From the NCBI RefSeq assembly GCF_006345805.1, contig NC_043007.1, positions 47,120,001 to 47,184,000 on the forward strand: DNA of 64,000 bases, in the 5' to 3' direction. Source of the DNA: Octopus sinensis. Taxonomy: Eukaryota. The notes below the pieces were generated by a model that was given only the letters and a program-made list of their open reading frames with translations, had not been told where the DNA came from and made no database searches. Position 1 is the first letter of the stretch. Each line of letters starts with the position of its first letter. A program made the translations under genes and the position numbers. Of this stretch, positions 2,013-62,100 are shown piece by piece.

Positions 2013-2492
<480 letters not shown>

Positions 2493-7261: not shown

Positions 7262-7657
7262 TATTTTTCTGTTTTTACTTGTTTCAGTCATTTGACTGCG
7301 GCCATGCTGGGGCACCGCCTTTAGTCGAGCAACTCGACCCCAAGACGTATTCTTTGTAAGCCTAGTACTTAGTCTATCGGTCTCTTTTACCGAACTGATA
7401 ATTTACTGGGACGTAAACACACCCCAATCGGTTGTCAAGCGATGTTGGGGCGACAAACACAGACACACAAACATTTACACATACATATTTATATACATAT
7501 ACGGCGGGCTTCTTTCATTTTCCGTCTACCAAATCCACTCACAAGTCTTTGGTCGGCCCAAGGCTATAGAAGAAGATACTTGCCGAAGGTGCCATGCAGT
7601 ATGACTGAACTCAGGACCATGTGGTTGGTAAGCAAGCTATTTACCACACAGCCACTT
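7262..7657 (-). mobile_element. SINE family A copy, full length
   Basis: Reverse complement begins gtggctgtgtggtaaatagcttgcttaccaaccacatgg and ends cgcagtcaaatgactgaaacaag. Confidence 0.9.
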
Positions 7658-34021: not shown

Positions 34022-34185
34022 AGGGCGTGGTTGTGTGGTAAGAAGCTTGCTTCCCAAGCACATGGTTCCTGGTTCAGTCTCACTGAGTGGTACCTCAGGC
34101 AAGTGGCTTCTGTTATAGTCTCGGGGCGACCAAAGCCTTGTGAGTAGATTTAATAGACGGAAACTGAAAAAATGCCAGTTCTATT

Positions 34186-38203: not shown

Positions 38204-40266
38204 CATTCAAGTAGGTGTCTATATGTTTTAGTATAGATTTAAGTAATATCTGGTGGAAATGAACTGAAATCTTATTATATACGGATATAAATTTATCGAA
38301 ATACACGAAAACAAATTAAGTTGCCTCTTTGCAAAGCAATGAACTACAATTGAAGGGACACTGTCACTTCTCTATCAGACACAGTCTAAGCAGTCATCAT
38401 TAAATATTAATTAATAAGCTTCCAAGGACAAAGCTCATAAATCTCCTAATCATTTTATTGATATAATGAAAACACTCTCCTACTAATAATTTATTATGGA
38501 ATATTTTTACTGAATTATTAAACAATGTTTTGGAAATCGATGCTTTTCTAATTGTTTATGAATACGGAAAAATTGTTCCTGTTTTGTAAATGAAGTCTTA
38601 TATTCTTTCATTAATTCGTTTTTTCTGTGGTTTCTAGTGATGCTTCTATTAGGAAAACGAACTGTGCTTAAACAATGTTTTCAAAATGATGTCGGATGCT
38701 TTTTAAGTGAGGAACTTTGAATTCTTATATATAACTAAAACACATATATATTATTCGCATGGATAAGGACATACTGTGCGAAGAAAGACGAGACAAATTT
38801 GTCCATAATGCAAATTTATGCACACAACCGTAGTTAAAGAACTAGAAAGAACGGAAGGCGACAGTGCTGGAGCTCCTCTTGCAACTATTTATTTGCTGAT
38901 ATTGAAACAATATTAAATTTGTCTCGATATATATTTTATCGATATTATTTATTTGTTGAATTCATTTGGGACTGGTATTAAACATGAACGCAAGTATGAA
39001 CGCCACTATATCTCGAAACATGCCTGCACATTGGAATTTCATGGAAAATAGATTAGTTGCGTATCCATCTCGCCTTACTTAGGCTGCTGTGTCTAGTAGG
39101 TCAAGCAATCGCGTAGAACGAGTGAACATGTTTAAAAAAGAAAGATGCTTTTACTGTTACTGAAGTACATTTTAGTTGTGGTATTAATGTAGAAAGTTGA
39201 ACTGACACGTTTTGAATAGATTTGGTGAGCTGTTATTGATTTAACCGTTACAGTTTCTTAAACCCCTATATCAATTTCATTTCTCTGAACAAAACTCCCG
39301 TCATAACGAGTAGTCAATTGTAACTTGCAAATATCCCTCCAATACATATACTTAAATAAAACAGAGAAACAGAAATATGAAGTCTTTCAAATCTCAGAAG
39401 AAAGTGGATATGCTCGAATTTGGAATACCAATGATTTTAGATAATTTTATAATGGTTGACCAGAAACTAAACCACGAGAGTGAAAATGCCGGCTTTGAAA
39501 TGTAAAAGAATTAAGTTTCACTAAGTAGGATAAAATGAAAACTAAAATTTCTTTTTACATACTTTTGAGCATTATCTTTATATATATAAAACTGAGAATG
39601 TGTGTGTCTGTCTGTCTGTGTGTTTCCCTAAAATTTAAGAACTACACAACCAATTTCATTCAAATTTTACACATGCCTTACATAGGGTCCGGGGAGTGTC
39701 ATCGGCAAAAAATTTAACTTTTTGCCTAGCACGAGCCCACAGCAATATCATATCTTCTCCAATACGATTCCCTAAAACTTGAGAGCTACACAACCAATTT
39801 CATTCAAATTTTACACATGCCTTACTTAGGGTCCATGTAGTTTCATGGGCAAAAAAATGTTCAACTTCTTGCCTAGAACGAGCCCATAGCAATATCATAT
39901 CTTCTCCACTATTTCAGTATTACGTGTTAAAAGTAAAACAAAAATATTTCTCTTTTTATGTCAGATGCTTTCACTTTAATAATAAAAATAATAATAAAAA
40001 TTGAATTATATATAGTAAGTAATAATTAAAATCAAACTAAAGTATAATATAATCGTAACATAACAAAAGTAAAAATAGCAATTGGTATAAAATTGCATCA
40101 ATGATTTGAACTTGAGTAAGTGGTTTCACATGAATGGGAATAAATTAAAAATAAAATTAGCGTGCAGAAATGGAATAGTCCAGATGGATAATAAAAAATT
40201 AAAGAAAAGACTATTGTCTATAAAGTATACAATGTAGAGAAAAAAGATTTGAACACATGGAGGAAA

Positions 40267-42188
40267 TCTACCCACGTGTGTTGTGAGTTATTTTGTATGT
40301 GAAAATTGGGAAAAAAAAACTGTTAAAAAATTGTCAAAAAATTGAATCGCGCGAGGCGTTTGCCGATACGTGTTTGAACCTTTTATAGAAGGTGTGTCGA
40401 CCCTCAAGTCATGGAGACTTACGCGGGGGTCGCCACAACAAAAAGTGACGAGTCTCTTAGAATAAAAGAAGTGTTCTTTAGAAAAGAACAATTGAAGGAA
40501 TACGAGAAGTTCGTCAAAAGGGAGGGTGACAGCGTGAAGCTGGTCCCGCCTGTGGAAACAATAGAAGAAAAAAATAACAAGACGATAACGTATAGAACGC
40601 AAGATAGAAACACGAGAAAACTGGTGAGAGTGACGATTGAAGAAATAGAGAAATGTCTGGGGGACATCATGAAAAAAGCGACTTTTGTAGACAGACAGAG
40701 GAAAGAAATATGGTACGGTGGAGGTGAGATGCGCAACAAAGGAAGTGGCGGCCTCATTGGCTTCCACTGTCCTGAAAGCGGAAAATTTCACCATGTGGCC
40801 GACGTATAAAGGAAGACGAGGGGTACGGGTAAGAGTCCCAAAGGTGCCCCCAAATATTAAAACAGAAATGCTGGTAACAGCCATTATTGGGGCAGCAAAA
40901 GAGGAAGTAGAAATAGGGTCAATTAAGGAGACAAACGTTGTAAATTGGAAGGGATTCGGAGTAGAGTTGTGGCTGATGGCCACAATGGAAGACATCGAAA
41001 GATTTCCCTTCCAAATAGAAATAGAAAACGAGAAAACAATTAGTGTAATAGTGGAAGGCACAAAACCGAATTGCTACCTGTGCGGTTCAAGAGGGCACAT
41101 AAAAAAGGAATGTCCGCTGTATGAATTCACAGCGGAGCAAAAAGAGACACAAAGTGGAGAGAAGGAAAACGAACACGAAGGAAAGAACAGCGAAAACAAG
41201 GAAAAGGAAATAACGGAGAAACAACAAGAGAAGGGAAGTAACAGCGCACTGAAGGAAAATGAAAACAAAGGGAAGAAGATAGTAGAAAAGGAGCAACATT
41301 CACAGGGTGCAGAAGTAGTGGAGAAGGAGCCAAGGCAGAAGCAAGAGAAAGAAAAGGAAAGTACATTAAAGGAAAGAGAAAAAGCAGGAAAAGAACAAGA
41401 GAAGGAACAGAACCAAGAGAAAGGAAAAGATGGTATGCAAAAAGGAAAAGAAACAACAGGAAAGGAACTTAAGGCACAGGGTAGAGAGACGGCAGACAAA
41501 GAGCCAAAAAGACAAGAGAAGGAAAAGAAAGAAGAGAAAGCAAAAAGAGAGAAAGAGAGAAACCGAGGGAGGAGAAAAAAGGAAGTAAGTCCTAAGAGAA
41601 AAACTAGAGAAAACGTAGGTACGAATAGAAAATTCAATACTATGGAACGTTGATCCATCACAAGCACTGTGAGGAGATGGAAGATTTAATAAGCGTAACA
41701 AACGGATATACGTGGGTCAGGATGGGCACCGAATGGAAAGAAACAGGTGCACTCGTCCACGAGAACGACGCCGAGGCGTTCATCGAGGCAGCTGGCGAGA
41801 ACGTGTTAAAACATATGAAATGCCGACTTACAAGGTGGCCTCGAACGATGGAAGTTTACTCAGATTTGGTAGACATAATGGAGTATATATAAAAGAAAAG
41901 GTATTGTGAAAACTTTAATTTGGAAATGATAAAAAGAACTTTAAATTCTGAAAAAAAAAAAAGAAATGTTGAACTTTGTAAAACTTTTTGAAATGTATGT
42001 TGAAAATGTATAAAATGTTTTATTTGGAAAATATTGTTGACGAATAAAAATAAATGACGAAATGTAACCGCTCGATTTCGGGGATCGAGTGGGCATTGCA
42101 CCACATTGTACAAACTTCATAATTCATTATTCATTTTCCCGATTGTATTGTCCCATCTATGTAGCCCCTAGTGGGTAATAATAAAACA
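40267..42188 (+). mobile_element. ORF1-only (half-L1-like) Tx1-clade retroelement E3
   Basis: 12-bp TSD acatggaggaaa (40255-66) / acatgggggaaa (42189-200); 5' UTR, one ORF1, ~300-bp 3' UTR ending taataataaaaca; no ORF2 sequence. Confidence 0.75.
40411..41892 (+). pseudogene. Gag-like ORF1 of E3 (RRM-like region, CCHC knuckle, E/K-rich linker), two frameshifts
   Basis: ORF pieces 40411-40809, 40718-41653, 41650-41892; WPTYKGRR; CYLCGSRGHIKKEC. Confidence 0.85.
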
Positions 42189-42940
42189 ACATGGGGGAAA
42201 GCACATTCGAAAAGTGTCTTGGTGCGACTATGAAAGAGGCGGTAAATTCGCCACAATAGAAGCAAGGTTAGAGTCAACGGAGCGTGCAAGGGAGTACTCG
42301 ACTCGAACTTGCAAAGTGGAAATATTTTATTTTTACCTTTATATCTGGGACGTAGGACGTCCCGGAAAAATATTTAAAATGCCCCCCCCCCCCCGAAGTA
42401 GAGGTAGGCTTGATTGTAGCCACACTTCTATACAAAAGGGAGAACAAGATACAATTGATCGAAATTACAAGAGACGGGCTAACAATTCCAGTCTGTTATA
42501 TATTTTGAGTATTGTTATCACTAGCGATATCAAGATATAACTTTGTATTTTGCATTTTATGTGTAGATGTATATATATAGATGTACATGTAGTATGTACA
42601 CATATATATACACATAAATACATGCACTAGCATTATGACCCGGCAACGACGGGTCTTTAATGCTAGTAATGTATATCGATGAACAAATAGCCATCTTATA
42701 TCCAATAACATGTGCCACAACAACGCATATGTAGACATTTCTCAGCTAATAAAACACCTTTTAAACTTACTTCACTTTTTAAAATTTGGATAAACAAGTA
42801 TATATCAGCATCAACATTTTGTTTTGATACCGATTTACTTTCGAGTATCACTTATCTGAGAGTTGCGCAGTTTAAACAATATAATGCTAAATTTACTAAA
42901 TTTTTATACATCAAGTTCGACCACATAATTTAATACAAAA

Positions 42941-43620
42941 TCTATATAATAATCTGCTTTTTCGTTCGCCTGTTATACATTAGTCAGTTAGAGAAAGTTG
43001 GAAGTGGAGTGAGAGGTGAAGTAAATGAGTGTGTGAGAGAGAGAGGGGGAAATGAGGAGTGTGAGTACAGAAAAAGGAAGTGAGGAAGAAGTAAAAGAGA
43101 CGTATAATAAGGTCAAATGTGTCACGTGGTTAGTTGAAGGGAGACGCGAAGAGCGAGAGAAAAGAGGGAGAGAGAAGTGTTAACGACGTGCTAAAGAGTG
43201 GGAAGGGAAAGGAAAAGAGAAAGAGATATGTTTAGGATACAATATTTAGCAGAGAGTGATGCTCTGGTGGAGAGGTTAAAAGCATGAAAAGGGAGATGAT
43301 TAGGAGAGGTAGTTACCGTAAGCGAGATGATTAGGAGAGGTAGTTACCGTAAGCGAGAAATAGAGAGAGAGTTAATAGAAGTGAGATGTGAAGAGGAAAA
43401 AATAAATTTTAAAGATATGAAAAGGAAATTACATGGTTAAAATGTTTCTTAAAGAGGAAGAGAGAAAGTGAAAAATTTAAAGTATTTGTAGACGGTAGCA
43501 AAATAAATATAAAAATGCAAATCATCCTTTCTTTCTTAAATAGCTTCTCTTAATCTTTTTCGTTCTGTGGAATTTCCACGAATCTCAATAGTATTATATA
43601 AAACATCTACATTATATTAG
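42941..43620 (+). mobile_element. Probable 5' part of another non-autonomous Helitron
   Basis: A|TCTATATAATAAT start, purine-rich body, exact 31-bp tandem duplication at 43293-43354; no 3' end found. Confidence 0.3.
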
Positions 43621-43635
43621 GTATCTTACGTTACA

Positions 43636-43825
43636 TCTCTCTTTTACTTGTTTCAGTCATTTGACTGTAGCCATGCTGGAGCACCGCCTTTAGTCGGGAA
43701 AATCGACCCCAGGACTTATTCTTTGTAAGCCTAGTACTTATTCTATCGGTCTCCTTTGCCGAATCGCTAAGTTACGTGGACATAAACACACCAGCATCGG
43801 TTGTCAAGCGACGTTGGGGGGACAA

Positions 43826-43860
<35 letters not shown>

Positions 43861-44046
43861 GACGGAAACTGAAAGAATCTCGTCGTGTATATATATATAT
43901 ATACATGACGGGCTTCTTTCAGTTTCCGTCTATCAAATCCTCTCAGAAGGCTTTTGTCGGCCCGAGGCTATAGTAGAAGACACTTGCCCAAGGTACCACA
44001 CAGTGGAACTGATCCTGGAACCATATGGTTGGTAAGCAACCTACTT
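43636..44046 (-). mobile_element. SINE family A copy; its 5' head is displaced to 51917-51950 by E2 and E1
   Basis: Body matches 7262-7657 up to ggttggtaagcaacctactt; the missing accacacagccactcc appears at 51932. Confidence 0.9.
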
Positions 44047-46244
44047 CTCTAAAACGGGCTTCTCTAAAACATTGTTCTTTTAAAAACAAACACAAAACGA
44101 GGTATTAAACCTCTTACAATTTTTACAACTTTTCAATTTTTGGACTTAACAGTCCATTACTAACAACAACAACAGCTCAATAGTTACATATGATGTGAAT
44201 ACAATACACAAAGCCCTTCCTCCCAGACCTGGCTTACACTTTCCTTAGGAATGCGCCAGCTCTAGATCCGGGCCCCTCAAGTCGTATCACAATTTATGAC
44301 TCGTCCTCAAAATAACTTGTGCCCGCATCTTCCGTCATCCACAACGCCTCCCTCAGAACGTAATCGAGTTTCGTGTTAGCGTCGCCCGGGACCAAGCTAT
44401 AATCCTCATTGAGCTCCTTCAGCCCAAGCGTCACGTCGCAGGTAGCCTCCACAGCTACCTGCGGAGGCCATTCGGGGTCCTGTGTGAAGGCTAAAGGTGC
44501 TCCCTTATGGTGCTTTTCCATCACCTTTTCAATCTCTCCGCCTCTATGGAAGTAGATCAATACATCATCTTTCCTCGGGGGCGGGATATTCAATTCTTTC
44601 GTTGGCGGCACAGTTCCCGCCAACGGTGTTTCTTCTTCTGTCGGTTGCACAACCCCAACCGACGTAGTTCCGGAACATTCCGGTACTATGTCACCGACTG
44701 CCGGTAATGTCCCGTTTCTCTTCCTCTTTCTCTTTTTTCCTTTTCAACTGAGGGAGGGTGCGTCTCCTCCGTGGCCGGAAGATTCGCCTTTCCCTCCTCA
44801 TCCCTAGTATCCTTTGGTGAACACCCATTGTTGCTCACCTTCCTCTTTCGGCCACTGTTTGAGGAATCTTCCGCTTCCTCGGCCGTCTTCATTTCCTCTT
44901 CTATAGGGGTCTCACTTAACTGCTCCGGGATCCTATTTTATTCCCGGGGACAGTTTTTCTTTATGTGGCCAGACTCCAAGCACCGATGACACCTAGGGGT
45001 GTGACCCTCAAGTATCACCGGGTACCTGCACCCGGCCATTTTCAAAAAATCTGGAAGAACCAGATCGGCTGATTGGGTCCAAAGGGTCAAAATTGCTTTT
45101 GACCTAACCCAAACAGCCGCAGAAAGAACTTTCACATTAAGAAGCTTAGTTCCGCTGCCAACCAGACCCCAGCGGATAGTCTCCTCTATCCACTCGGGTT
45201 TTATCCCGGGTGACAGCCCGCAGATCCAAGCTTTCGTCAATCTCTTTCCATGGTACGTGGGCAGAAATAAAATTTCCTAACCCTCCAGGGGTTTACTAGC
45301 AAATTTGCAAGCCTCTTCAGGGGTGTCAAATAGCAACCACACGGTTGCATATCTGACACCCCTGGAAATGAAGCAAATACTCTGCCAACTCTTTTTCAAT
45401 TGCCGTCTTTTCGAACAGGGCGATGGTGTCGAGTGCCTTGGAGTAGGTTCTCAACACCACCGTCCTATCTTCACGGTCTTTTAAGCACTTTTTAGGCGGT
45501 ATAATCTCCCATTCCAAAATTTTGTCATTTTTTATTGCCATGTTTTTTTTGTTTTTTTTTTAAATATATTCAAAATAAAACTTAAAAAGCGAGAAGAAAA
45601 AAGTTCAAAAGTCCAAATAAAGTTCGATAGATTTTTTGAAAAAAATAAGGAAGATACAAAAAAGAGAAAGCACAACAGAAGGGAAAAAATCAACAGAAAG
45701 TCACAATAAACAAAAAACAAAAAAGAGGAGTTAAATAAAGTTCAAAAGAAAGTCAGAAACACAGCAAAAAATCTTCTGGCCATACGGTACTCCCGGCCTA
45801 AGTTGAACCTGGAACGTCGCAACTGGAACACAACTTCCATGAAAATTGGTATAAAATTGGTATAAAATTGTTTAAACTTTGGAGGCAAAACACTCCCCTA
45901 TATAGCAGTTCTCACAATTCTTAAAGTTCTTTAATACAGTTCTCATAATTAGGTAAGAAAAATATTCACTCAATTATCGAAGACGAATACGCCCCCCCCC
46001 CCCAAAAAAAAATTCTCACAATTCAGCGAGAAAAATATATTTGCTCATGTCGGCAGAATCAGAATTCTGAATCCAGTAGGACTTCCTGCCTGTAAAAACA
46101 ATTTTCAACAAAAATTCCCACTGTACCCTGAAAACAGAATCTTACCTTACAATGGGGCTTCAACATTTTTCAATTCTAGACGGCTTCAAAAGCACGTCTT
46201 CACCGCTTCAGTGCCAAATACAACACTGACTCGCACATGCGCAG
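44047..46244 (-). mobile_element. ORF1-only (half-L1-like) Tx1-clade retroelement E2
   Basis: ~700-bp 5' UTR, ORF1 45541-44294, ~250-bp 3' UTR; aagcaacct at 44034-42 and 46245-53; no APE/RT sequence. Confidence 0.75.
44294..45541 (-). pseudogene. Gag-like ORF1 of E2 with CCHC knuckle; two stops and two frameshifts
   Basis: EDRTVVLRTY, VRYATV, ILFLPTYHGKR, LEGHTPRCHRCLESGHIKKNC, C-terminal KDDVLIYFHRGG... Confidence 0.85.
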
Positions 46245-46478
46245 AAGCAACCTGTTAGCAAGCTACTTTATTTCATGAAAGATTCGCCATTAAGGCGTTA
46301 CATAGAGGGGACATACAAATACAGACAAACACATAGGGTGTAGTAGCTTAAAACGTTGGTGATTACAATAAAATATATATAATATTTACAATATAAAGTT
46401 TTAAAAATTTGGTATTATACAGTAGGGCACGGATCCCAGCGATCTGGGTAGAACCTTTACTTCTTGATCCGGCCACAC

Positions 46479-49400
46479 TTACCTGGTGCCAGATATACCC
46501 AGCTTGCACGCTACAGACTTCCATCTTTTCGCAAACATATCTCATGACAGACACCTCTTCTCCAGCCTGATCTTACTACCGAGGTGGTAACTGAAAAAGT
46601 TAACCAACCCCTGGCCGGATACAAAGGTACATGTCACTATACCTTTCGTACGCGTCTCCCATACTGTTTCTTTCAGTATGGCTACTACGCAGGAAAAACA
46701 AGCCTTCCTTTCCCTGCTGAGGAAAGGAGGTGGCACAATCTCAATGATAGACTCCGCTGATAGCTGTACTCTTCCATTCACTGACAACAGTTGTTCGGCG
46801 AAAGCAATCAGTCCCGATAACTCCGGACACTCCACGAATGCGTGCAAGACGGTTTCCCTATCCTGCTCACATCGCGGACATGTCGGCGAGACGGCACTTC
46901 CGTGCCTTGACAGCTTGTCGCGAACAGGTAATGCCGCACGGAAATACTGCCAGGCCAGGTATTTCTGGTAATTATCCAGGTACCCCGGCCCGAACGTTCT
47001 CCGGAACAGGTTGGTCAACTGATTTTCATCGTAGCCCAGGGTGTCCCCCAAGGCGTCTTCGGACTTAACCTCCACTAACCCGCTATAGAAATCCGCGGTG
47101 GAACTCCTGTTACCGGCATTGCCCGCCCGAGAGAGTAGCTGAAGTGCCTGACGGCACTCCAATTGCCAGTCCCCCAGCCTAGGTCTCTGCTTGATCCAAT
47201 TACCAATGTCCGTTAAGGACGTTAATCGCGGAAAGTAGAACAGAACGTGCGGTGACCACACCTGTTCTCCATCCAAGTAAAGCCAGAGGTGCCTCAACCT
47301 TAACGCGACCTTTCGCATCTTCAGCCAAGGCATCCCTAGCCCACCCTTTAGCGGTTTCTGGCAGCAGACAGAGCGCTTTACAAGGGGCTTCCCTCCTTTC
47401 CACAAAAAGTGGAAAAGGATTCTCTCCAACTTGTTCAGCCACAAATCGGGGCAAGGCACCACGGTCAGGCGGTAAGTGACTACTGATGCTATGAACATCT
47501 GCACCACCTCCGCCCTCCCTAGCAGGGATAACGCCCGTCCAGACCAGGTCTGGGTTAGAGCGGTCGCCTTGCCGGCCACTTCAGTCCAATTTTTCTCTAT
47601 CTGGAGGTCTGGCCCGAACCAGACTCCGAGCAGCTTAACAGGACCTTCCGTCCAACGCCCCACGACGTTATTGGACGGCATCGGCTTGCCCCTCCAGGTG
47701 CCGAGTTGCAAACCGACCGACTTGTCTTTGTTCACCTTTGCTCCTGCCACCACCTCGTAGCTTTTGATGGCCTCTTCCACCACTGGGAGCTGGTCCTCAT
47801 CTGCCACGATGATGGAGATGTCATCCGCGTACTCCGTAGCTCCTCTTCCACACCATAGATCATGCGGTGCGCCCCCTATTGCCCCCAACTTCCGCAGCAA
47901 GGGCTGAAGAGCCAACGCATATAGAAGTGGGGACAGGGGACACCCCTGCCGAACTGAACGCTCGATCCTGAACGGCTTCGAAAGGAAGCCGTTCACCTTG
48001 ACCACAGACTCGATGTCGCTATACAAAGCAGCGATCCAGCCGCGAAAGGTCGGGCCCAGGCCAGTCCCCCCCCCCCGAGGACCGCCGCCAAGTACCGATG
48101 GTCGACCCTATCAACTGCTTTAGACTGGTCTAAATGTGCCAGTTCCCCCCCTGCGCCAGAAAGCTTCCCGACCCTCTCTAAGGAGTAGCGTATAAGGTGG
48201 AGATTGTCGTGTATCGTCCTGCCCGGGATAGCGCACGTTTGCGCTTCTCCGACAAGTTTATCCACGACCCGCGCCGACCTTTTCGCCAGCACCTTGGCCA
48301 AAATCTTTAACTCTGTGTTCAGCAGATTTATGGGCCTGAAGTTTCCTATCTCGTCCCCCTTGCTCGGGTCCTTCTTGATCAACGTCACCGCACCCCGGCT
48401 CACAGACTTGGGAATTTTCCCATTCTGCTGCCAGTTGGCGAAGACGCTAGCCAGCAGGTGCCCGAACAAGTCTGGCATACTTTTTAAAACTCATAGGGCA
48501 GACCGTCGAGACCCGGCGACTTCTCCTCGGGGCACCCGCCCAACGCCTCGATTACTTCCTCGGCTGTGATTGGCCCCTCACAGCACTCAGCCTCTCGTGC
48601 CGAGAGCCGCGGGCCACCAGACAGGAAGTCCCTAAGGGCCTCACCATGATCCAGCGTCCCGCACCTCCCGAACAACAAGGCGAAGTGCTTGTAAAGTGTC
48701 TCACACATCTCGTCCCGTTCCTTCACCGTGCATCCGTTTCCATCAACAAGAGACCTAATTGTGGCATTGTTGCCACGCTGGGTTTCTATCGTACGGGCCC
48801 ATCCGGCAACATAAATTCCCTCGCGGCCCAATGCTCGTACTTTAGCCCGAACTCTACACCCCTCATGTTTGGTTTTGAGGTGACGGTCTAAAGCCGTTCT
48901 CGCCGCCAAAATGTGAGATGCAGAGCCCAACCTCAACGCCTACTCTAACTTCTTAGCTAATTGCCCTTCTATTCTAGCCTTATCTAGTCTTAGTTGCTTA
49001 CTAAACCTAATGGACTCGAATCGAATGGCTCTTTTCAGGGCGAACCACCACCGGTTATTAATCACGGCTCCGGTTAACGACCTCTGCACTAACTCCTTAA
49101 TCCGACTGCGGTATGCCTCAAAAGTCAAAATAGACTTGTTCAGCTTCCAGTAGCCGTTTCATATCTTTAGTGTGCTACCTATGTCCAGTCTACACTTGAC
49201 CATTCTATGGTCCGTATAGGGCACCTGGACGAGCTGTGGACAACTAAAAGTAGACTTATCTCTAGTTCTTATCACTATCCTGTCTAGATAAGACTTGAAC
49301 CTTCCGTCGCCACTCATCCAGGTCCACTCTGGGACGTTCGGATGGTCAAGTCTGTAACGATCTGCCAGCTGAAACCGCTTAAGCAGGTCCACGAGACGTG

Positions 49401-49883
49401 AGGTCACTTTCCTATGGATCGAGCCAACACTATCGATGTGTACGTCAACGATAACATTAAAGTCTCCTAATACTACTAAAGTCTTCGACGTCACGAGAAA
49501 GTTCTCTAGGCTCCGATAAAAATCAGTTTGGAAGCCTCTAGCACAAGGTGCATAGAGTCCGATCAACCTGAAGGCCTTACTGCTGTATGTCAAATCAAGG
49601 ACGACCAGCCCACCTTCAGGGTCCACATAGACTGTACTTGCCTGCAGAGCCAAGTTTTTACGGATCAGTACCACTACGCCCCTCGTCCTCCGGTCTGACC
49701 GGGAGACATGATTTTCTCGTAGCTATTCAGGAGAGGCGAGAAGGTTTGTAGACTGTCCAACTTGGTCTCTGTAGCAACCATCACATGCATATCATGTGAT
49801 CTGAGATCATCGAGGAAACACCTCTGCTTCCACTTCGAACTCAGATCACGCACATTCAAACAACCAAGGCTAAGAGACGCCAT
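46479..49883 (-). pseudogene. E1 ORF2: AP endonuclease, reverse transcriptase and C-terminal CCHC, disrupted
   Basis: CLNVR, VATETK, LYAP, LGDFN, YLDRI (APE); KSPGLDGLPYEF, NFRPINLLN, VRQGCPLSPLLY, EYADD (RT); CPRC..ETVLHAFVEC. About three frameshifts and three premature stops; natural stop appears at 46479. Confidence 0.93.
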
Positions 49884-49900
49884 TACAAAAAGTGAAGGTT

Positions 49901-51316
49901 CTACTTACATTTCTTTGGAGATGTGGGGGCTGACCTCACCACACGTGGATCCGTCCCCATCTTCTCTCTCTTCGCGTAACCCGGTAAATCCACAATCTTC
50001 CATATGGCCATCTGGTTTTTGTCCTTTAGTTGCCGGTATAGGGATTCTTCTACCCTTGCACATCTGTTTTTCAAATCATGGTGTTGGATGTGCAGCATAG
50101 TCTTTTTGTGCTTTAAAATAGCGTCACTTGTATACGTGTCTGTTGTATCGTATTCCACCAACATAACATTTTTGTTTTCTTCCGGGACAGATGGGCAGGG
50201 TTTCTTTTTTGGTGTCTGTGGTGCGTTTTTTCTGTTTTGTGTGGAGGATATGGGTGGGGAAGGTCTACGGGAACGTTTCTTTCCCACTAGTGTGAATCCA
50301 CCCTCTGAAACCTCCATGGTGTTATCTGAGGGGTTGGTGGCAGTTTCTTTCGGCGCAGTGTTTTCCGTTGGTGCCGGGTCTTCCAAGAGGGTTGGGTCAT
50401 TTTGTTTATGTAGGGACTTGTGCGTGCCGGGACTGGGTTTTTCTGTGCTTTGTTTGGGGACTAGCACCTCAACAACGGGGGTAGGAGTTTTTGTGTTTGT
50501 GAGGGGTTGGTTTTCTTTTGTTATTTGAGGGGCCTGGTGTTTGCAACAACTTTTATTTTCTTCACAGTCAGCTCGAATGTGGCCCTTTTTTCCGCATTGG
50601 TAACAGGTGGGCTTACGGCCTTCCACTTGTACCCTAAGGGCCACATTCTCCCCAACGAGTATTCTCTCTGGTAGGGCCTGAATGTCCTCCTGTTTGCCTT
50701 GTATTAAAACCGTTATGTTCCACCCTAACCACATCTGTGAGGCGGAACTTGTGGTCTGTAATATGTTTATCCGGTCCGTCCTGTTAAACAACAGGCCGGC
50801 CACCACTTCTTTCGGGTCTACTGTGGGTGGGATTTCGTTAATCCTTACGCGGGATGTTCGTCGCCCCCTGTACGTTGGCAAAAGTACCACTTCCTTGGTT
50901 TTCAGGGGGCACACGGCGTGCCCGCGAGCCACCTTTTCCTCTGATAATTGAACCTCAACGGATCCGTATGCCCGTCCCCTCGAGATATACACTATACCCC
51001 TCCATATCGGGGCCAGGCATTTTTCAATGGTTTCCTTCCCGAAGTGCTTAAACCTTTTGTCTTGTGGGCAGAAGGTTTTAAACACCACGGTCCTCTTTTC
51101 CGTTTCTAGCACGGTGGAGGAGGGCGATATCACAACATCACCTCCCTCCTCCTTCATTCTTTTAAAATATCCCTGCAGCATGTCTGCAGAGATATCTATA
51201 ATTTCGGTTGATACTTCAGCAACTGCCGAAAACTTTTTTACAGCGTTGGCGCAATTGCTAACATCAACATTGCTCTCTTCAAGAGAAGATTTTCCATGTA
51301 TTATTTCAACCGACAT
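49901..51316 (-). CDS. E1 ORF1, intact gag-like nucleic-acid-binding protein (471 aa from ATG at 51316)
   Basis: Uninterrupted ORF; LLPTYRGRR; VEGRKPTCYQCGKKGHIRADC; KKRSRR and PKKK basic motifs. Confidence 0.9.
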   Translation of the reverse strand: MSVEIIHGKSSLEESNVDVSNCANAVKKFSAVAEVSTEIIDISADMLQGYFKRMKEEGGDVVISPSSTVLETEKRTVVFKTFCPQDKRFKHFGKETIEKCLAPIWRGIVYISRGRAYGSVEVQLSEEKVARGHAVCPLKTKEVVLLPTYRGRRTSRVRINEIPPTVDPKEVVAGLLFNRTDRINILQTTSSASQMWLGWNITVLIQGKQEDIQALPERILVGENVALRVQVEGRKPTCYQCGKKGHIRADCEENKSCCKHQAPQITKENQPLTNTKTPTPVVEVLVPKQSTEKPSPGTHKSLHKQNDPTLLEDPAPTENTAPKETATNPSDNTMEVSEGGFTLVGKKRSRRPSPPISSTQNRKNAPQTPKKKPCPSVPEENKNVMLVEYDTTDTYTSDAILKHKKTMLHIQHHDLKNRCARVEESLYRQLKDKNQMAIWKIVDLPGYAKREKMGTDPRVVRSAPTSPKKCK

Positions 51317-52632
51317 GGTTGAAAAGTAATTGGTTTCCCACAAAACTGGGAGACCTTTCAAAAAAAGAAATTTTCCTCTCACAAAGGACAAAAGTAATTA
51401 ATTTTTTAAATGCTCGCAGTCCTAGGTTCAAATCCCACCCCCGCTGGGGGGTGAGACGTAGCAACGAAGTCTACGACGATTTGAAATTATTTTCCACCAC
51501 AACGAAATCCCCAAAAAGGGAAACCTATATTTTTCCAAAACAGTTCAAATCTCGCCCGTGCTACGGGTGGATGTCACAATAGAGCCTACAATGGCTAAAA
51601 TTAAATTTTTCCACAATAACAATTTGCTATCCCCAAAACGGGAAGCCTATAATATTTTTTCCCTCTTAATAAGGATAACAGTTCAATTGCCACCCCCGCC
51701 GGGTGGGGGACACAACAATAAAGCCTACAACGGCTTTAACAAGTTCAACAATATTAATAATTCAACATTAATTATTTTTTTGTTGTCTTACAACAATTAC
51801 TTTTTCCCGTCACCGGGAAGAAAGCACAAAAGTTCACAAAAGTATTCAACAATAAACAGCAGAAAAATTATCCGTGTGACTCACCGCATAAAAAAACACC
51901 TCCGAATACGTCGGAGGTTAGCAAGCTACTTACCACACAGCCACTCCTACGCTTATCAACTTTTGTCCAAAAAATCTCATGAATTTAGAAGATTCTGTCC
52001 AAGGGACAAGCCAAAGAGATAAAGCACTTACTATATTTGTAATTGGGGTAATGCCTTCATACAAATATCACCGCTATGGGGACAGATACATTCACCATGG
52101 GATTTTTATGATAAAATACCTATGCATTATGACCCCCATATGTGCCAAGTATATTCAAATTTAAGACTCTATAATCCCTATTCGACTTCAACAAGCCAAA
52201 GATTTCTTGACCTATAAACCTTAAACAGAAGATCGTTATTGCTTTCAGATTTAAGTACCAATGCAATTTAGATTTATTTGATTAACTAATTTCTATAATC
52301 ATTATCAATTTGCTTAATGGACTGAACATAACCATGGAAACTTCTAGAAGAACGACATTAATTTAATAGCAATTTTTAATTTAGATTTGAGACGCGTGAC
52401 TGACTTGGCACGAAGCGGGCTTGGAAGTGTAAGCTATGTATATGAAGTAATATTAAAACAGGTTTCCTAACTTCGTATTTTCGCTCCTTTTTCTAACAAG
52501 TTCAACTCCTCTCTATCTAAATATTATTCTGGGTACATAAAAGATAAATTCAAGTTTTTGTAGTCTTGAGTATTTCAGTTAACGAAGCAATATCACGCAC
52601 ACACACACACACACATTTATATATATATGTAT

Positions 52633-60499: not shown

Positions 60500-62100
60500 C
60501 ATACTATTGTTACGCCGCGCACTCAACTCAGGACCCTAAGACCCTGGGCCCTAAGTCGTTCTTTGCAACATCTATAGGCTCAAATTTTATGGCTCTTTGG
60601 AGGGTATGCCACCGTTTGTTGTTATTAATGGCACCATACAATGCCATCAACACTAAGTGCCTAATCTGACATGCACAGGAGCCAAAAGAGAATTATTGAG
60701 TTTCCAGTATCCGGATCCCTGTCTACGTAATTGATCTAAGTCCAGCCTACAGGTCACAAATTTGTAATCATTGTAGCTGACATGGTAAAATTGTGAACGA
60801 CTGACTAGGTTTTTGTCTATCGCCCTAATTATAATCCTGTCTAAATAAGATCTTGTTGACCCATCGCTATTAGTCCATATCCACAGCTGAGTGTCTGGGA
60901 CATCTAGTGTGTACCTATCTGCCAGTTGAAACAGACTGAGCAGATTTTTGGAGCACGGGTTTCCTATCCGTAGACGAGGCAACGTAATCTACGCGTGCAT
61001 CGCAGGTTTCATTAATGTCACCTAACATTACTATAGTGTGAGACATACCTAGAAATTTCTCTAGGCTTTGAAAAACACCAGACTGTCCTGCTCGTAGACA
61101 GGTACCAGCCTGGAGGTCTTACCACTACTGATCCTCACGTCAAGGACGACCAACCTGCCTTCTGGGTCGATAAAGATTGTTTTTGTTTCTAAATCCAAAT
61201 TTTTCATGAGTAGCAAAGTGACACCTCTCCCTCCTCCAGGTTGGCATGGAGATATAATAGTTTTCGTAGCCGTTTAGGAGTGAGGAAAAGTTTCTTTGAC
61301 TACTCAGTCTGGATTCTGTGGAAATTACAATATCCATTCTATGCGAACTGAGGTCATTAAGTATTTTTACGTGCCAGTGTACTGTTTTCTTTTTTCTTTT
61401 GTTTTTGCTGTAGGGTTAGTGGGGTTGGAATGACTCGTTAGTTTTCTGGTGATTTTCTCCTATCTTTCCTCTTGTGTTTCTTTCATCTCCTCCTTTCTTT
61501 TGCATTTTGTTAATTCCTCACAGTGAGTTTCGCTGGGTTTCGTCTCCTTTGGTGTCTTGACAGGTGGGGGTATCGTTGCTTTTTCGGAGAGAGGTTAGCA
61601 CTCGGCCCTAATGTGGCCTTTTTGGCTACACTTGTAGCAACGAGGTTTTCTCACCTCGACAATGATTCGCAGCTTGCATTTCCCCCACCTGTATGGTATC
61701 TATTATAAATTCTAAATCGTCAGGGGCTGCTTGTCCGAGCATTTCGAGCCCCTGCACCTGCCAATTTTGCAATTCTAAAGTGGCGGCTTGGAGAATAGTT
61801 ATTTTATCCTCCAAGCCCCTCATTATGGCTGCCACCAGCCAAGCAGTGTCTACCTCTGGTGGAATGTCTCCTACCATTATCTTGGAAGTCCGCCTTCCAA
61901 GATAAGTGTGTAGGAGTACTACCTCAGCTGTTTTTAGAGTCTGTATTGAAGCCTGCTTGGCCTTTCTTCCCACTTGAAGCGGACCTCCAGCGTGGCATAC
62001 TTCACTCCTCTAGTGATGTATGTCACATCGCTCCATACAGGTGAAGTCACAGTTCCACGGCCTCCGTACTTCCATTATCCAGTTTTTTGCTTTTTACAAC
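60500..62100 (-). mobile_element. Decayed Tx1-like LINE E4 (ORF1 and APE part of ORF2; RT half missing)
   Basis: LLHTYLGRR, VEVRKPRCYKCSQKGHIRAEC, then ISTESRL, SYLDRI, GSGYWKLNNSLL. Confidence 0.85.

What the first reader, a model, noticed from the sequence alone, without database searches (positions are those of the whole stretch)
40267..51916. ORF1-only 'half-LINE' retroelements of the Tx1 clade next to an autonomous partner
Seen: E2 (44047-46244) and E3 (40267-42188) each have a 5' UTR, one gag-like ORF1 with the PTY-G-(R/K)R and CCHC motifs of E1 ORF1, a 3' UTR and flanking duplications, but no trace of APE or RT. Their ORF1s differ strongly from E1 and from each other, including in the C-terminal domains, so they are not simple recent deletions of E1. 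Known: HAL1 elements are ORF1-only non-autonomous L1 derivatives described mainly in mammals. Inference: these are independent HAL1-like families of the Tx1 branch, mobilised in trans by E1-type ORF2, and possibly undescribed in this lineage.
Basis: partly seen in the sequence, partly recalled or inferred. Interest (0 to 1): 0.85.

Follow-up and report, generated by a model that had tools for sequence, protein, structure and literature searches.

The report
ORF1-only LINE parasites in octopus
Two octopus retrotransposon families keep only the RNA-binding gene of an L1/Tx1-type LINE; they land at the same exact target sites as their full-length relatives, building head-to-tail arrays, which is a new example of a known kind of genomic parasite rather than a new kind.

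Summary
The window is Octopus DNA. E3 (40267-42186, +) and E2 (46244-44047, -) are complete LINE-like units: 5' UTR, one ORF1 and a 3' UTR, bounded by 13-bp target-site duplications. Neither has any APE or RT sequence.

Both window copies are dead: E3 has two frameshifts, and E2 has several frameshifts plus a stop. E1 is dead too, with three frameshifts and three stops in ORF2.

Both are real families.
- E3 relatives occur at 8 further loci in O. vulgaris, in at least four subfamilies. They use three different target sites, none carries ORF2, and some have intact 466-aa ORFs. dN/dS is 0.07-0.15 at dS above 1.
- E2 relatives occur at two O. sinensis loci, again without ORF2. All three copies sit at the same nucleotide of one SINE.

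New points:
- The elements are target-specific, and repeated insertion builds mixed head-to-tail arrays with one duplication at each junction.
- E3's partner is not E1. It is a related LINE, called F here, which shares E3's last ~45 nt and its target sites. One F copy next to an E3-type unit has intact ORF1 and ORF2.
- E2 shares only the SINE target with E1, not its 3' tail.

Trans-mobilisation is inferred. ORF1-only LINEs are already known from three other clades. Verdict: new member of a known kind.

The parts
39573..40253 (+). Upstream part ('A') of a dispersed host repeat that carries the E3/F target sites.
   Evidence: The same ~690-bp sequence, with the same 5' boundary, lies upstream of E3-type arrays in L001, L002, L003, L008 and L011 on different O. 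vulgaris chromosomes. Homology stops at 39573.
40254..40266 (+). 5' copy of the E3 target-site duplication, CACATGGAGGAAA (target 'site 1').
   Evidence: The same site is used in L001, L011 and L012.
40267..42186 (+). E3, an ORF1-only LINE unit. 5' UTR 40267-40410; ORF1 40411-41892 (two frameshifts, near 40700 and 41650); 3' UTR 41893-42186, ending in the conserved tail ...GATTGTATTGTCCCATCTATGTAGCCCCTAGTGGGTAATAATAAAA.
   Evidence: It is 92-94% identical to units in L002 and L008 and 71% identical to the L001 units.
42187..42200 (+). 3' copy of the E3 target-site duplication, CAACATGGGGGAAA.
   Evidence: The same sequence follows F in L011 and L012.
42201..42676 (+). Downstream host repeat. 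Segment R (42201-42481) contains an ORF1-like fragment at 42264-42374. The 'site 2' 13-mer ACAATTCCAGTCT lies at 42482-42494, followed by segment B to 42676.
   Evidence: It is contiguous and 90-92% identical to the sequence after F in L011 and L012. B follows F in L002 and L003. The ORF1-like fragment gives tblastn E 2.8e-4 against F ORF1.
43640..44033 (-). 3' part of the tRNA-type SINE copy that hosts E1 and E2 (ACCAACCATATGG...).
   Evidence: Intact copies of the same SINE lie at 2022, 7617(-) and 34035. It is 80-85% identical to SINE copies in L002, L003 and L009.
44034..44046 (-). Third copy of the SINE 13-mer, AAGTAGGTTGCTT: the 3' target-site duplication of E2.
44047..46244 (-). E2, an ORF1-only LINE unit. 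5' UTR 46244-45542; ORF1 45541-44294 in several frames (frameshifts, a stop after CCHC at about 44938, C-terminal domain 44650-44294); 3' UTR 44293-44047.
   Evidence: It is 77% identical over the 5' UTR and ORF1 to L009, and 72% over ORF1 to L004. The 5' UTR is homologous to that of L004.
46245..46268 (-). Junction between E1 and E2: AAGTAGCTTGCTAAC (3' duplication of E1) followed by AGGTTGCTT (5' duplication of E2).
46269..51916 (-). E1, a full-length but dead L1/Tx1-type LINE. 5' UTR 51916-51317 with three ~120-140-bp monomers; intact ORF1 51316-49901 (471 aa); ORF2 (APE, RT, zf-RVT) 49883-46542 with three frameshifts and three in-frame stops; 3' UTR 46541-46269.
51917..51953 (-). 5' part of the host SINE (GCGTAGGAGTGGCTGTGTGGT), followed by the first copy of the 15-mer AAGTAGCTTGCTAAC at 51931-51917.

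Best explanation
E2 and E3 belong to two old families of non-autonomous LINEs in Octopus that encode only ORF1. They descend from the same L1/Tx1-type group as E1.

Each element has its own 5' UTR and one ORF1. ORF1 consists of an N-terminal region, a predicted tandem-RRM core, a CCHC zinc knuckle, a charged linker and a C-terminal domain. A short 3' UTR follows.

Proposed mechanism:
- The element is transcribed and its ORF1 protein coats its own RNA.
- The endonuclease and reverse transcriptase are borrowed from a full-length relative.
- For E3 that relative is the F family. The handle is probably the ~45-nt 3' terminal sequence with a small hairpin that E3, its subfamilies and F all share.
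- The borrowed endonuclease nicks a specific sequence. For E3 and F this is one of two sites in a dispersed host repeat, or a site beside another SINE. For E2 and E1 it is one position in a tRNA-type SINE.
- Target-primed reverse transcription leaves a 13-bp duplication, which recreates the target. Further insertions therefore land at the same place and build head-to-tail arrays mixing ORF1-only, internally deleted and full-length elements.

Shown: the anatomy, the copies, the duplications, the arrays, the shared tail and the purifying selection. Inferred: trans-mobilisation, recognition of the tail by the RT, and endonuclease specificity.
For: Family status of E3:
- Nine annotated Octopus proteins match its ORF1.
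- Loci L001, L002, L003, L007, L008, L011 and L012 hold about 25 units of 1.75-1.9 kb. They share the same 5' and 3' ends, and none has ORF2 between ORF1 and the 3' UTR.

Target-site duplications differ by site:
- Site 1 is CACATGGAGGAAA-like, in the window, L001, L011 and L012.
- Site 2 is ACAATTCCAGTCT, in L002, L003 and L008.
- A third site, AAATCAGAAACGT, is used in L007.
- One copy of the duplication lies at every junction.

Arrays are heterogeneous, which needs sequential insertion:
- L008 reads E3c-E3b-E3-F.
- L002 reads E3-E3-F.
- L005 reads F followed by at least three ORF1-plus-half-ORF2 deletion derivatives.
- L006 reads F-F-F.

Shared tail: the last ~45 nt are about 90% conserved among E3, E3b, E3c, F and the deleted F, while the rest of the 3' UTRs is unrelated. 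E1 has a diverged version whose 4-bp hairpin is kept by two compensatory pairs.

An apparently intact partner: F in L011 has ORFs of 340 and 1130 aa and lies directly 3' of an E3b unit.

Selection:
- E3 versus E3b gives dN/dS 0.13 (N-terminus to CCHC) and 0.07 (RRM to CCHC) at dS 1.3-1.7.
- One L001 unit has an intact 466-aa ORF.
- E2 versus the L004 gene gives dN/dS 0.23 at dS 0.9.

E2 family: three copies (window, L004, L009) at 72-77% identity all start with CTGCGCATG-type sequence immediately after SINE ...GTGGTAAGTAGCTTGCTT. None has ORF2. Intact SINE copies show this is an internal SINE position.

Protein type:
- The AlphaFold model of the ORF1 core (pLDDT 77.8) matches tandem-RRM proteins.
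- Pfam finds CCHC, APE, RT and zf-RVT.
- The RT's best solved relative is human L1 ORF2p, E 8e-30.

Precedent: Tx1-clade elements are target-specific. Tandem insertions sandwiching a duplication are described for Tx1-mobilised SINEU (PMC4494074).
Against: - No experiment or polymorphism data show mobility.
- All window copies are dead.
- The homogeneous arrays (L001, L012, and the deleted-F units of L005) could have grown partly by unequal crossing-over.
- E2's 3' end does not resemble E1's, so its partner is unidentified. Only the window copy of E2 keeps a complete 3' end.
- Copy numbers come from annotated proteins and 11 sampled loci, not from a genome-wide search.
- The hairpin covariation rests on one divergent sequence.
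- Part of the purifying selection could have acted in autonomous ancestors if the subfamilies lost ORF2 independently.
Confidence: 0.8

Rival explanations
1. E2 and E3 are ordinary dead LINE copies that lost ORF2 by deletion at this locus.
For: All three window copies carry frameshifts. Internal-deletion derivatives do arise in this group, as in L005.
Against: The same ORF1-only architecture, with the same ends, recurs at 8 other E3 loci and 2 other E2 loci on different chromosomes and in two species. The 1.9-2.2-kb unit itself is bounded by target-site duplications, and some copies have intact ORFs.
Confidence: 0.03
2. The units multiply mainly at the DNA level, as satellite-like tandem repeats or segmental duplications of a host repeat that carries them, and not by retrotransposition.
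For: L001 and L012 are arrays of at least 7-8 units of one subfamily at 95-97% identity. The deleted-F units in L005 have identical junctions. Flanks A and B are shared among loci.
Against: - Arrays mix subfamilies 71-75% identical to each other with a 5-kb LINE, in L008 and L002.
- Every junction carries the local target duplication.
- The same subfamily occurs at different targets: E3 at site 1 in the window and at site 2 in L002 and L008.
- The duplication length differs between E3 (13 bp) and F (19 bp) at one locus.
- The L001 units carry different lesions, and one is intact.
Confidence: 0.1
3. The ORF1-only units are host genes domesticated from LINE ORF1, like mammalian L1TD1, rather than mobile elements.
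For: NCBI annotates several as proteins. ORF1 is under purifying selection.
Against: They are multicopy, bounded by target-site duplications, and end in the LINE 3' tail. They sit in repeats, and most copies are broken.
Confidence: 0.03
4. E3 plus the downstream LINE F form one composite element with two ORF1 genes.
For: F lies directly 3' of E3-type units in L002, L003, L008, L011 and L012.
Against: A target duplication and a complete LINE 3' tail separate them. E3-type units occur without F in the window and in L007. F occurs without E3 in L005 and L006.
Confidence: 0.03

Closest known systems
HAL1 (half-L1) of mammals
   Same: A non-autonomous LINE derivative with a 5' UTR, ORF1 only and a 3' UTR. 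It arose as separate families and is presumed to use the ORF2 protein of an autonomous relative (PMC5753468; PMC5786205).
   Different: - HAL1 belongs to the mammalian L1 clade, whose ORF1 is of the coiled-coil/RRM/CTD type without CCHC (my knowledge of L1 ORF1p).
- It inserts dispersed with a poly(A) tail.
- The octopus elements have a tandem-RRM plus CCHC ORF1 and a specific ~45-nt 3' tail.
- They also have fixed 13-bp target sites and form head-to-tail arrays.
HeT-A / TART of Drosophila telomeres
   Same: HeT-A is a gag-only LINE (Jockey clade) that depends on the RT of a partner. Both accumulate in mixed head-to-tail arrays (PMC5786205; PMC13534243 abstract).
   Different: The Drosophila arrays are terminal and extend chromosome ends without an endonuclease target. 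The octopus arrays are interstitial, lie inside repeats, and carry a target-site duplication at each junction.
Ag-Sponge (CR1 clade, Anopheles)
   Same: Listed with HAL1 and HeT-A as an ORF1-present bipartite non-autonomous LINE (PMC5786205).
   Different: It belongs to a different clade. I know of no report of target specificity or arrays for it, and I did not check this.
Target-specific Tx1-clade LINEs and their SINEU passengers
   Same: The LINEs include Tx1L in Tx1D, Keno, Kibi and Koshi, and Tx1-Mar. They insert at one sequence inside a repeat. Tandem insertions sandwiching a duplication arise by sequential insertion, and the non-autonomous partner shares the target (PMC4494074).
   Different: The known passengers are SINEs without coding capacity. 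Here the passengers keep a selected ORF1. The targets, a tRNA-type SINE and an unclassified octopus repeat, are new.

Membership tests
ORF1-present non-autonomous LINE (the kind that includes HAL1, HeT-A and Ag-Sponge) | The unit has LINE 5' and 3' ends and encodes ORF1 but no endonuclease or RT. | tested here: met
   tblastn finds ORF1 but no APE or RT in E2, E3 or any of about 25 related units. E3's 3' tail is shared with the full-length LINE F.
ORF1-present non-autonomous LINE (the kind that includes HAL1, HeT-A and Ag-Sponge) | Multiple copies with the same termini and their own target-site duplications, showing the short unit itself transposes. | tested here: met
   E3 group: three different target sites, with 13-bp duplications at each junction. 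E2: three copies with the same 5' end and SINE site, but a full 3' end only in the window.
ORF1-present non-autonomous LINE (the kind that includes HAL1, HeT-A and Ag-Sponge) | ORF1 is maintained by selection. | tested here: met
   Pairwise Nei-Gojobori dN/dS is 0.07-0.15 for E3 versus E3b and 0.23 for E2 versus L004. An intact 466-aa ORF exists in L001. These are pairwise values only, with no phylogeny.
ORF1-present non-autonomous LINE (the kind that includes HAL1, HeT-A and Ag-Sponge) | Mobilised in trans by the ORF2 protein of an autonomous LINE. | not testable with these tools
   The support is indirect. E3 and F share the tail, the targets and physical adjacency, and F in L011 has intact ORFs.
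HAL1 in the strict sense (L1 clade) | Derived from a mammalian-type L1, whose ORF1 is of the coiled-coil/RRM/CTD type and which has a poly(A) tail. | tested here: not met
   ORF1 has a CCHC knuckle and a predicted tandem-RRM core. The 3' end is a specific tail ending AATAATAAAA, not a long poly(A).
Tx1 clade of non-LTR retrotransposons | The RT groups with Tx1 in a phylogeny. | not tested
   No reference Tx1 sequences were available. The RT's best solved relative is human L1 ORF2p, well above R2. L1-Tx1 families are reported in O. vulgaris by RepeatMasker-type classification (PMC13282606).
Tx1 clade of non-LTR retrotransposons | Architecture of an APE endonuclease, an RT and a C-terminal zinc-binding domain, preceded by an ORF1. 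| tested here: met
   Pfam finds Exo_endo_phos, RVT_1 and zf-RVT in E1 ORF2, and zf-CCHC in ORF1.
Tx1 clade of non-LTR retrotransposons | Insertion at a specific target sequence, often inside another repeat. | tested here: met
   All three E2-family copies, and E1, sit at the same SINE nucleotide. E3 and F sit at the same host-repeat sites in 4 and 3 loci.

The most novel reading that the evidence does not exclude
Octopus L1/Tx1-type LINEs carry long-lived protein-coding parasites. These would be ORF1-only lineages that have persisted under selection through more than one synonymous substitution per site, copying their hosts' 3' tail and target specificity. Together with their hosts they would build interstitial head-to-tail arrays by re-using the regenerated target, an internal-chromosome counterpart of the Drosophila HeT-A/TART telomere arrays. 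This would be the first ORF1-only lineage in the Tx1 group and in molluscs.
Probability: 0.45. Interest if true: 0.55.

Novelty: new member of a known kind. Interest (0 to 1): 0.5.

Why it matters
ORF1-only LINEs are rare. A 2018 survey lists only HeT-A, HAL1 and Ag-Sponge, from three clades (PMC5786205).

These octopus families add a fourth group, and they are unusually informative for three reasons:
- Parasite and host LINE share an identifiable 45-nt tail.
- They share an exact target.
- They lie side by side, in one case next to a full-length copy with intact reading frames.

This makes three questions directly testable in a retrotransposition assay: what ORF1 contributes in cis, how a stringent LINE RT recognises its template, and how the endonuclease chooses its target.

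The result also matters for octopus genome annotation. Several of these units are currently annotated as ordinary 'uncharacterized' genes, and one as 'EPM2A-interacting 1-like'. The arrays may also be collapsed or misclassified in repeat libraries.

Tried and rejected
- Nucleotide self-comparison of E1, E2 and E3 found nothing.
- UTR alignments gave only a short shared motif near the 3' ends. It became meaningful only once the F and E3 relatives were aligned.
- TRF missed the 1.78-kb arrays because its longest period is 500.
- I first read window 42201-42481 as the stump of a LINE that had followed E3. L011 and L012 show it is part of the host repeat. It does still contain an ORF1-like fragment.
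- An exact-sequence look-up of E1 ORF1 found no record, so E1's SINE specificity rests on this one copy.
- The profile search with all ORF1 types returned only four proteins and missed the E3 hits of the first search.
- The search of 1.84 billion representatives showed 397 related clusters at E 1e-10 or better, but gives no context or taxonomy.
- A metagenome scan with the 3'-tail 20-mer gave one unrelated chance hit.
- No tRNA or Rfam family was found in 39-53 kb.
- The HAL1 paper itself (PMC2923044) is not held.
- Rejected readings: an in-situ deletion, a domesticated gene, a composite E3+F element, and pure satellite amplification. See the rival explanations.

Full report
**What is in the window**

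The region is AT-rich animal DNA. Every related sequence found comes from Octopus vulgaris or O. sinensis. Three LINE-like elements lie in 40-52 kb.

E1 (51916 to 46269, minus strand):
- Its 5' UTR contains three ~120-140-bp monomers.
- ORF1 is intact at 471 aa and has a CCHC knuckle.
- ORF2 has APE, RT and zf-RVT domains.
- ORF2 is broken by three frameshifts and three in-frame stops when aligned to a relative. This copy is therefore dead.

E3 (40267-42186, plus strand):
- tblastn with E1 ORF1 matches at 33% identity (E 1e-23).
- ORF1 has one frameshift near 40700.
- A second frameshift near 41650 detaches a C-terminal domain that is in frame in intact relatives.

E2 (46244 to 44047, minus strand):
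- tblastn with E1 ORF1 matches at 29% identity (E 5e-14).
- ORF1 has frameshifts and an in-frame stop.

tblastn with all parts of ORF2 finds no APE or RT in 38-46 kb. The three elements share no nucleotide similarity.

**E3 is a member of a real ORF1-only family**

Nine annotated Octopus proteins of 216-380 aa match E3 ORF1. I fetched the DNA around seven of them. Every locus shows units of 1.75-1.9 kb with the same 5' end, one ORF1 and the same 3' end. None has ORF2 inside the unit.

| Locus | Content |
|---|---|
| L001 | at least 7 tandem units of a subfamily ('E3b') 71% identical to E3 |
| L002 | two E3 units (92-94% identical to the window copy), then a 5-kb full-length LINE, 'F' |
| L003 | one E3 unit, then F |
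| L008 | E3c (75%), E3b, E3 (94.4%), then F |
| L007 | a single unit of a fourth subfamily |
| L011 | E3b, then F |
| L012 | at least 8 E3b units, then F |

One L001 unit has a fully open 466-aa ORF. Other units carry different lesions.

Between the E3 and E3b lineages, dN/dS is 0.13 from the N-terminus to CCHC and 0.07 from the RRM to CCHC, at dS 1.3-1.7. Among close E3 copies it is 0.3-0.66. The two lineages share the whole unit layout. The ORF1-only state is therefore most simply ancestral to both, and ORF1 has been kept by selection since.

**Target-site duplications and arrays**

Every unit is bounded by a direct repeat equal to the local target. Target-site duplication is abbreviated TSD below.

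| Locus | TSD / target | Notes |
|---|---|---|
| Window | CACATGGAGGAAA before E3, CAACATGGGGGAAA after it | site 1 |
| L001, L011, L012 | variants of the same 13-mer | site 1; present at the array start, at each junction and after the last element |
| L002, L003, L008 | ACAATTCCAGTCT | site 2; in L002 the repeat is 13 bp for the E3 units and 19 bp for F |
| L007 | AAATCAGAAACGT | beside a different SINE |

The E3 subfamily thus occurs at site 1 (window) and at site 2 (L002, L008).

Sites 1 and 2 lie in a dispersed host repeat of unknown class.
- Its upstream part A (window 39573-40253) recurs at five of the other loci.
- Its downstream part R+B (42201-42676) recurs at two of them, and B alone at two more.
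- Homology stops at the same boundaries each time.
- R contains a short ORF1-like fragment, so the host may itself be very old LINE debris.

Arrays that mix subfamilies 71-75% identical with a 5-kb LINE cannot come from tandem duplication. They need repeated insertion into the regenerated target. This behaviour is described for Tx1-clade LINEs and their SINEU passengers (PMC4494074). Unequal exchange may still have expanded the homogeneous arrays.

**The partner of E3 is F, not E1**

F has ORF1, APE, RT and zf-RVT. Its ORF2 is 68% identical to E1 at the nucleotide level, and its ORF1 is about 41% identical in protein.

The last ~45 nt of F, E3, E3b, E3c and an internally deleted F read GATTGTATTGTCCCCTCTATGTT.GCCCCTTGTGGGTAATAATAAA. 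They are about 90% conserved, whereas the rest of the 3' UTRs is unrelated.

E1 has a diverged version of this tail. Its predicted 4-bp hairpin is kept through two compensatory changes. That covariation rests on one sequence and is weak evidence.

F uses the same target sites. In all five loci where both occur, F is the 3'-most element of the array. In L011, F has uninterrupted ORFs of 340 and 1130 aa and lies directly after an E3b unit.

The F family also forms arrays by itself (L006). It has produced a second kind of non-autonomous derivative that keeps an intact 450-aa ORF1 and only the 3' half of ORF2 (L005).

A shared tail and a shared target are the classical signature of a non-autonomous element that uses a stringent LINE's machinery. 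This is inference, not demonstration.

**E2 and E1**

On the minus strand the order is as follows:
1. The SINE 5' part.
2. AAGTAGCTTGCTAAC.
3. E1.
4. AAGTAGCTTGCTAAC followed by AGGTTGCTT.
5. E2.
6. AAGTAGGTTGCTT.
7. The SINE 3' part, beginning ACCAACC.

Intact copies of this SINE in the window read GTGGTAAGTAGCTTGCTT|ACCAACC. E1 and E2 therefore occupy the same 13-bp target in one SINE, with three copies of the 13-mer for two elements. This is the same logic as in the E3/F arrays.

Two further E2-family copies were found in O. sinensis.
- L004 is 72% identical over ORF1 and has an intact 281-aa ORF. Its 3' part is missing.
- L009 is 77% identical over the 5' UTR and the whole ORF1. Its 3' UTR is lost.
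- Both start with CTGCGCATG-type sequence immediately after the same SINE nucleotide.
- Neither has ORF2 downstream.

Exact reuse of one position in a ~300-bp SINE by three diverged copies is not expected by chance. dN/dS between E2 and the L004 gene is 0.23 at dS 0.9.

E2 is thus also a real ORF1-only family with target specificity, but the sample is small. Its 3' end does not resemble E1's. E1-type ORF2 is supported as the kind of endonuclease used, but the actual partner is unknown.

**The protein**

The AlphaFold model of the E1 ORF1 core has mean pLDDT 77.8, from a shallow alignment. It shows two beta-alpha-beta-beta-alpha-beta units. Its best PDB matches are all tandem-RRM proteins: NONO, Prp24 and hnRNP A1 UP1. 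A CCHC knuckle follows.

A profile of this ORF1 finds 397 clusters at E 1e-10 or better among 1.84 billion representatives. This protein type is therefore diverse. Several hits end in a C-terminal domain loosely like those of E1, F and E3. The RT's closest solved relative is human L1 ORF2p, with E 8e-30.

**Comparison with what is known**

A 2018 survey lists HeT-A (Jockey clade), HAL1 (L1) and Ag-Sponge (CR1) as the ORF1-present non-autonomous LINEs (PMC5786205). HAL1 arose several times in mammals (PMC5753468).

Tx1-clade elements are known for target specificity and for tandem insertions sandwiching a duplication. Thirteen recently active L1-Tx1 families are reported in O. vulgaris, with no mention of ORF1-only derivatives or targets (PMC13282606).

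E2 and E3 work like HAL1 but are not HAL1 in the strict sense. Their ORF1 is a different type, their 3' end is a specific tail rather than poly(A), and their targets are fixed. Tx1 membership fits the architecture and the behaviour, but no RT phylogeny was run. Repbase and Dfam could not be consulted, so prior deposition cannot be excluded.

**Verdict**

It also missed the most informative features: exact targets, the shared 3' tail and mixed head-to-tail arrays. I rate this a new member of a known kind, of moderate interest.

Noticed in passing
window 60558-62010 (minus strand): A fourth, old LINE fragment of the same group ('E4'). It has an ORF1 piece (39-47% identical to E1 and F, with a frameshift and a stop) followed by a partial APE. 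There is no RT, and it is truncated at both ends.
   Followed up: partly
window 51420-51740 (minus strand, E1 5' UTR): Three tandem ~120-140-bp monomers, each containing a GGG(T/C)GG..ATTTGAAC motif that looks like an antisense tRNA T-arm. They recall the promoter monomers of mouse L1. ARAGORN and Rfam find nothing.
   Followed up: partly
window 42264-42374 (plus strand): The host repeat that carries the E3/F target sites contains a 40-aa ORF1-like fragment (..LPLYLGRRTSR.., 45% identical to F ORF1, E 2.8e-4). The host may itself be ancient LINE debris. Its class is undetermined.
   Followed up: partly
L005 8166-17353 (O. sinensis CM016867): At least three tandem 3.57-kb units of an internally deleted F element. 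Each keeps an intact 450-aa ORF1 (P0012) plus only the 3' half of ORF2. This is a second type of protein-coding non-autonomous derivative.
   Followed up: partly
L011 11443-16300 (O. vulgaris OX597816): A full-length F copy with uninterrupted ORF1 (340 aa) and ORF2 (1130 aa), which is a candidate active element. It lies directly after an E3b unit.
   Followed up: partly
L002, L003, L008, L011, L012: In all five arrays that contain both kinds, the full-length LINE F is the 3'-most member, next to the downstream host flank. This suggests that arrays grow at one fixed end, but which end is unresolved. In the window's E1-E2 pair the order is reversed.
   Followed up: no
proteins P0001-P0013 (NCBI annotation of O. 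vulgaris and O. sinensis): Several of these transposon ORF1s are annotated as ordinary genes, either 'uncharacterized protein LOC...' or 'EPM2A-interacting 1-like'. Others are fused into chimeric gene models spanning 10-27 kb (P0003, P0004, P0005, P0013).
   Followed up: no
window 2022-2052, 7617-7647(-), 34035-34065; 43640-44033(-): There are multiple copies of the abundant tRNA-type octopus SINE. Many are followed by (TA)n or (TG)n-rich tails, which dominate the low-complexity ORFs listed in this window.
   Followed up: no
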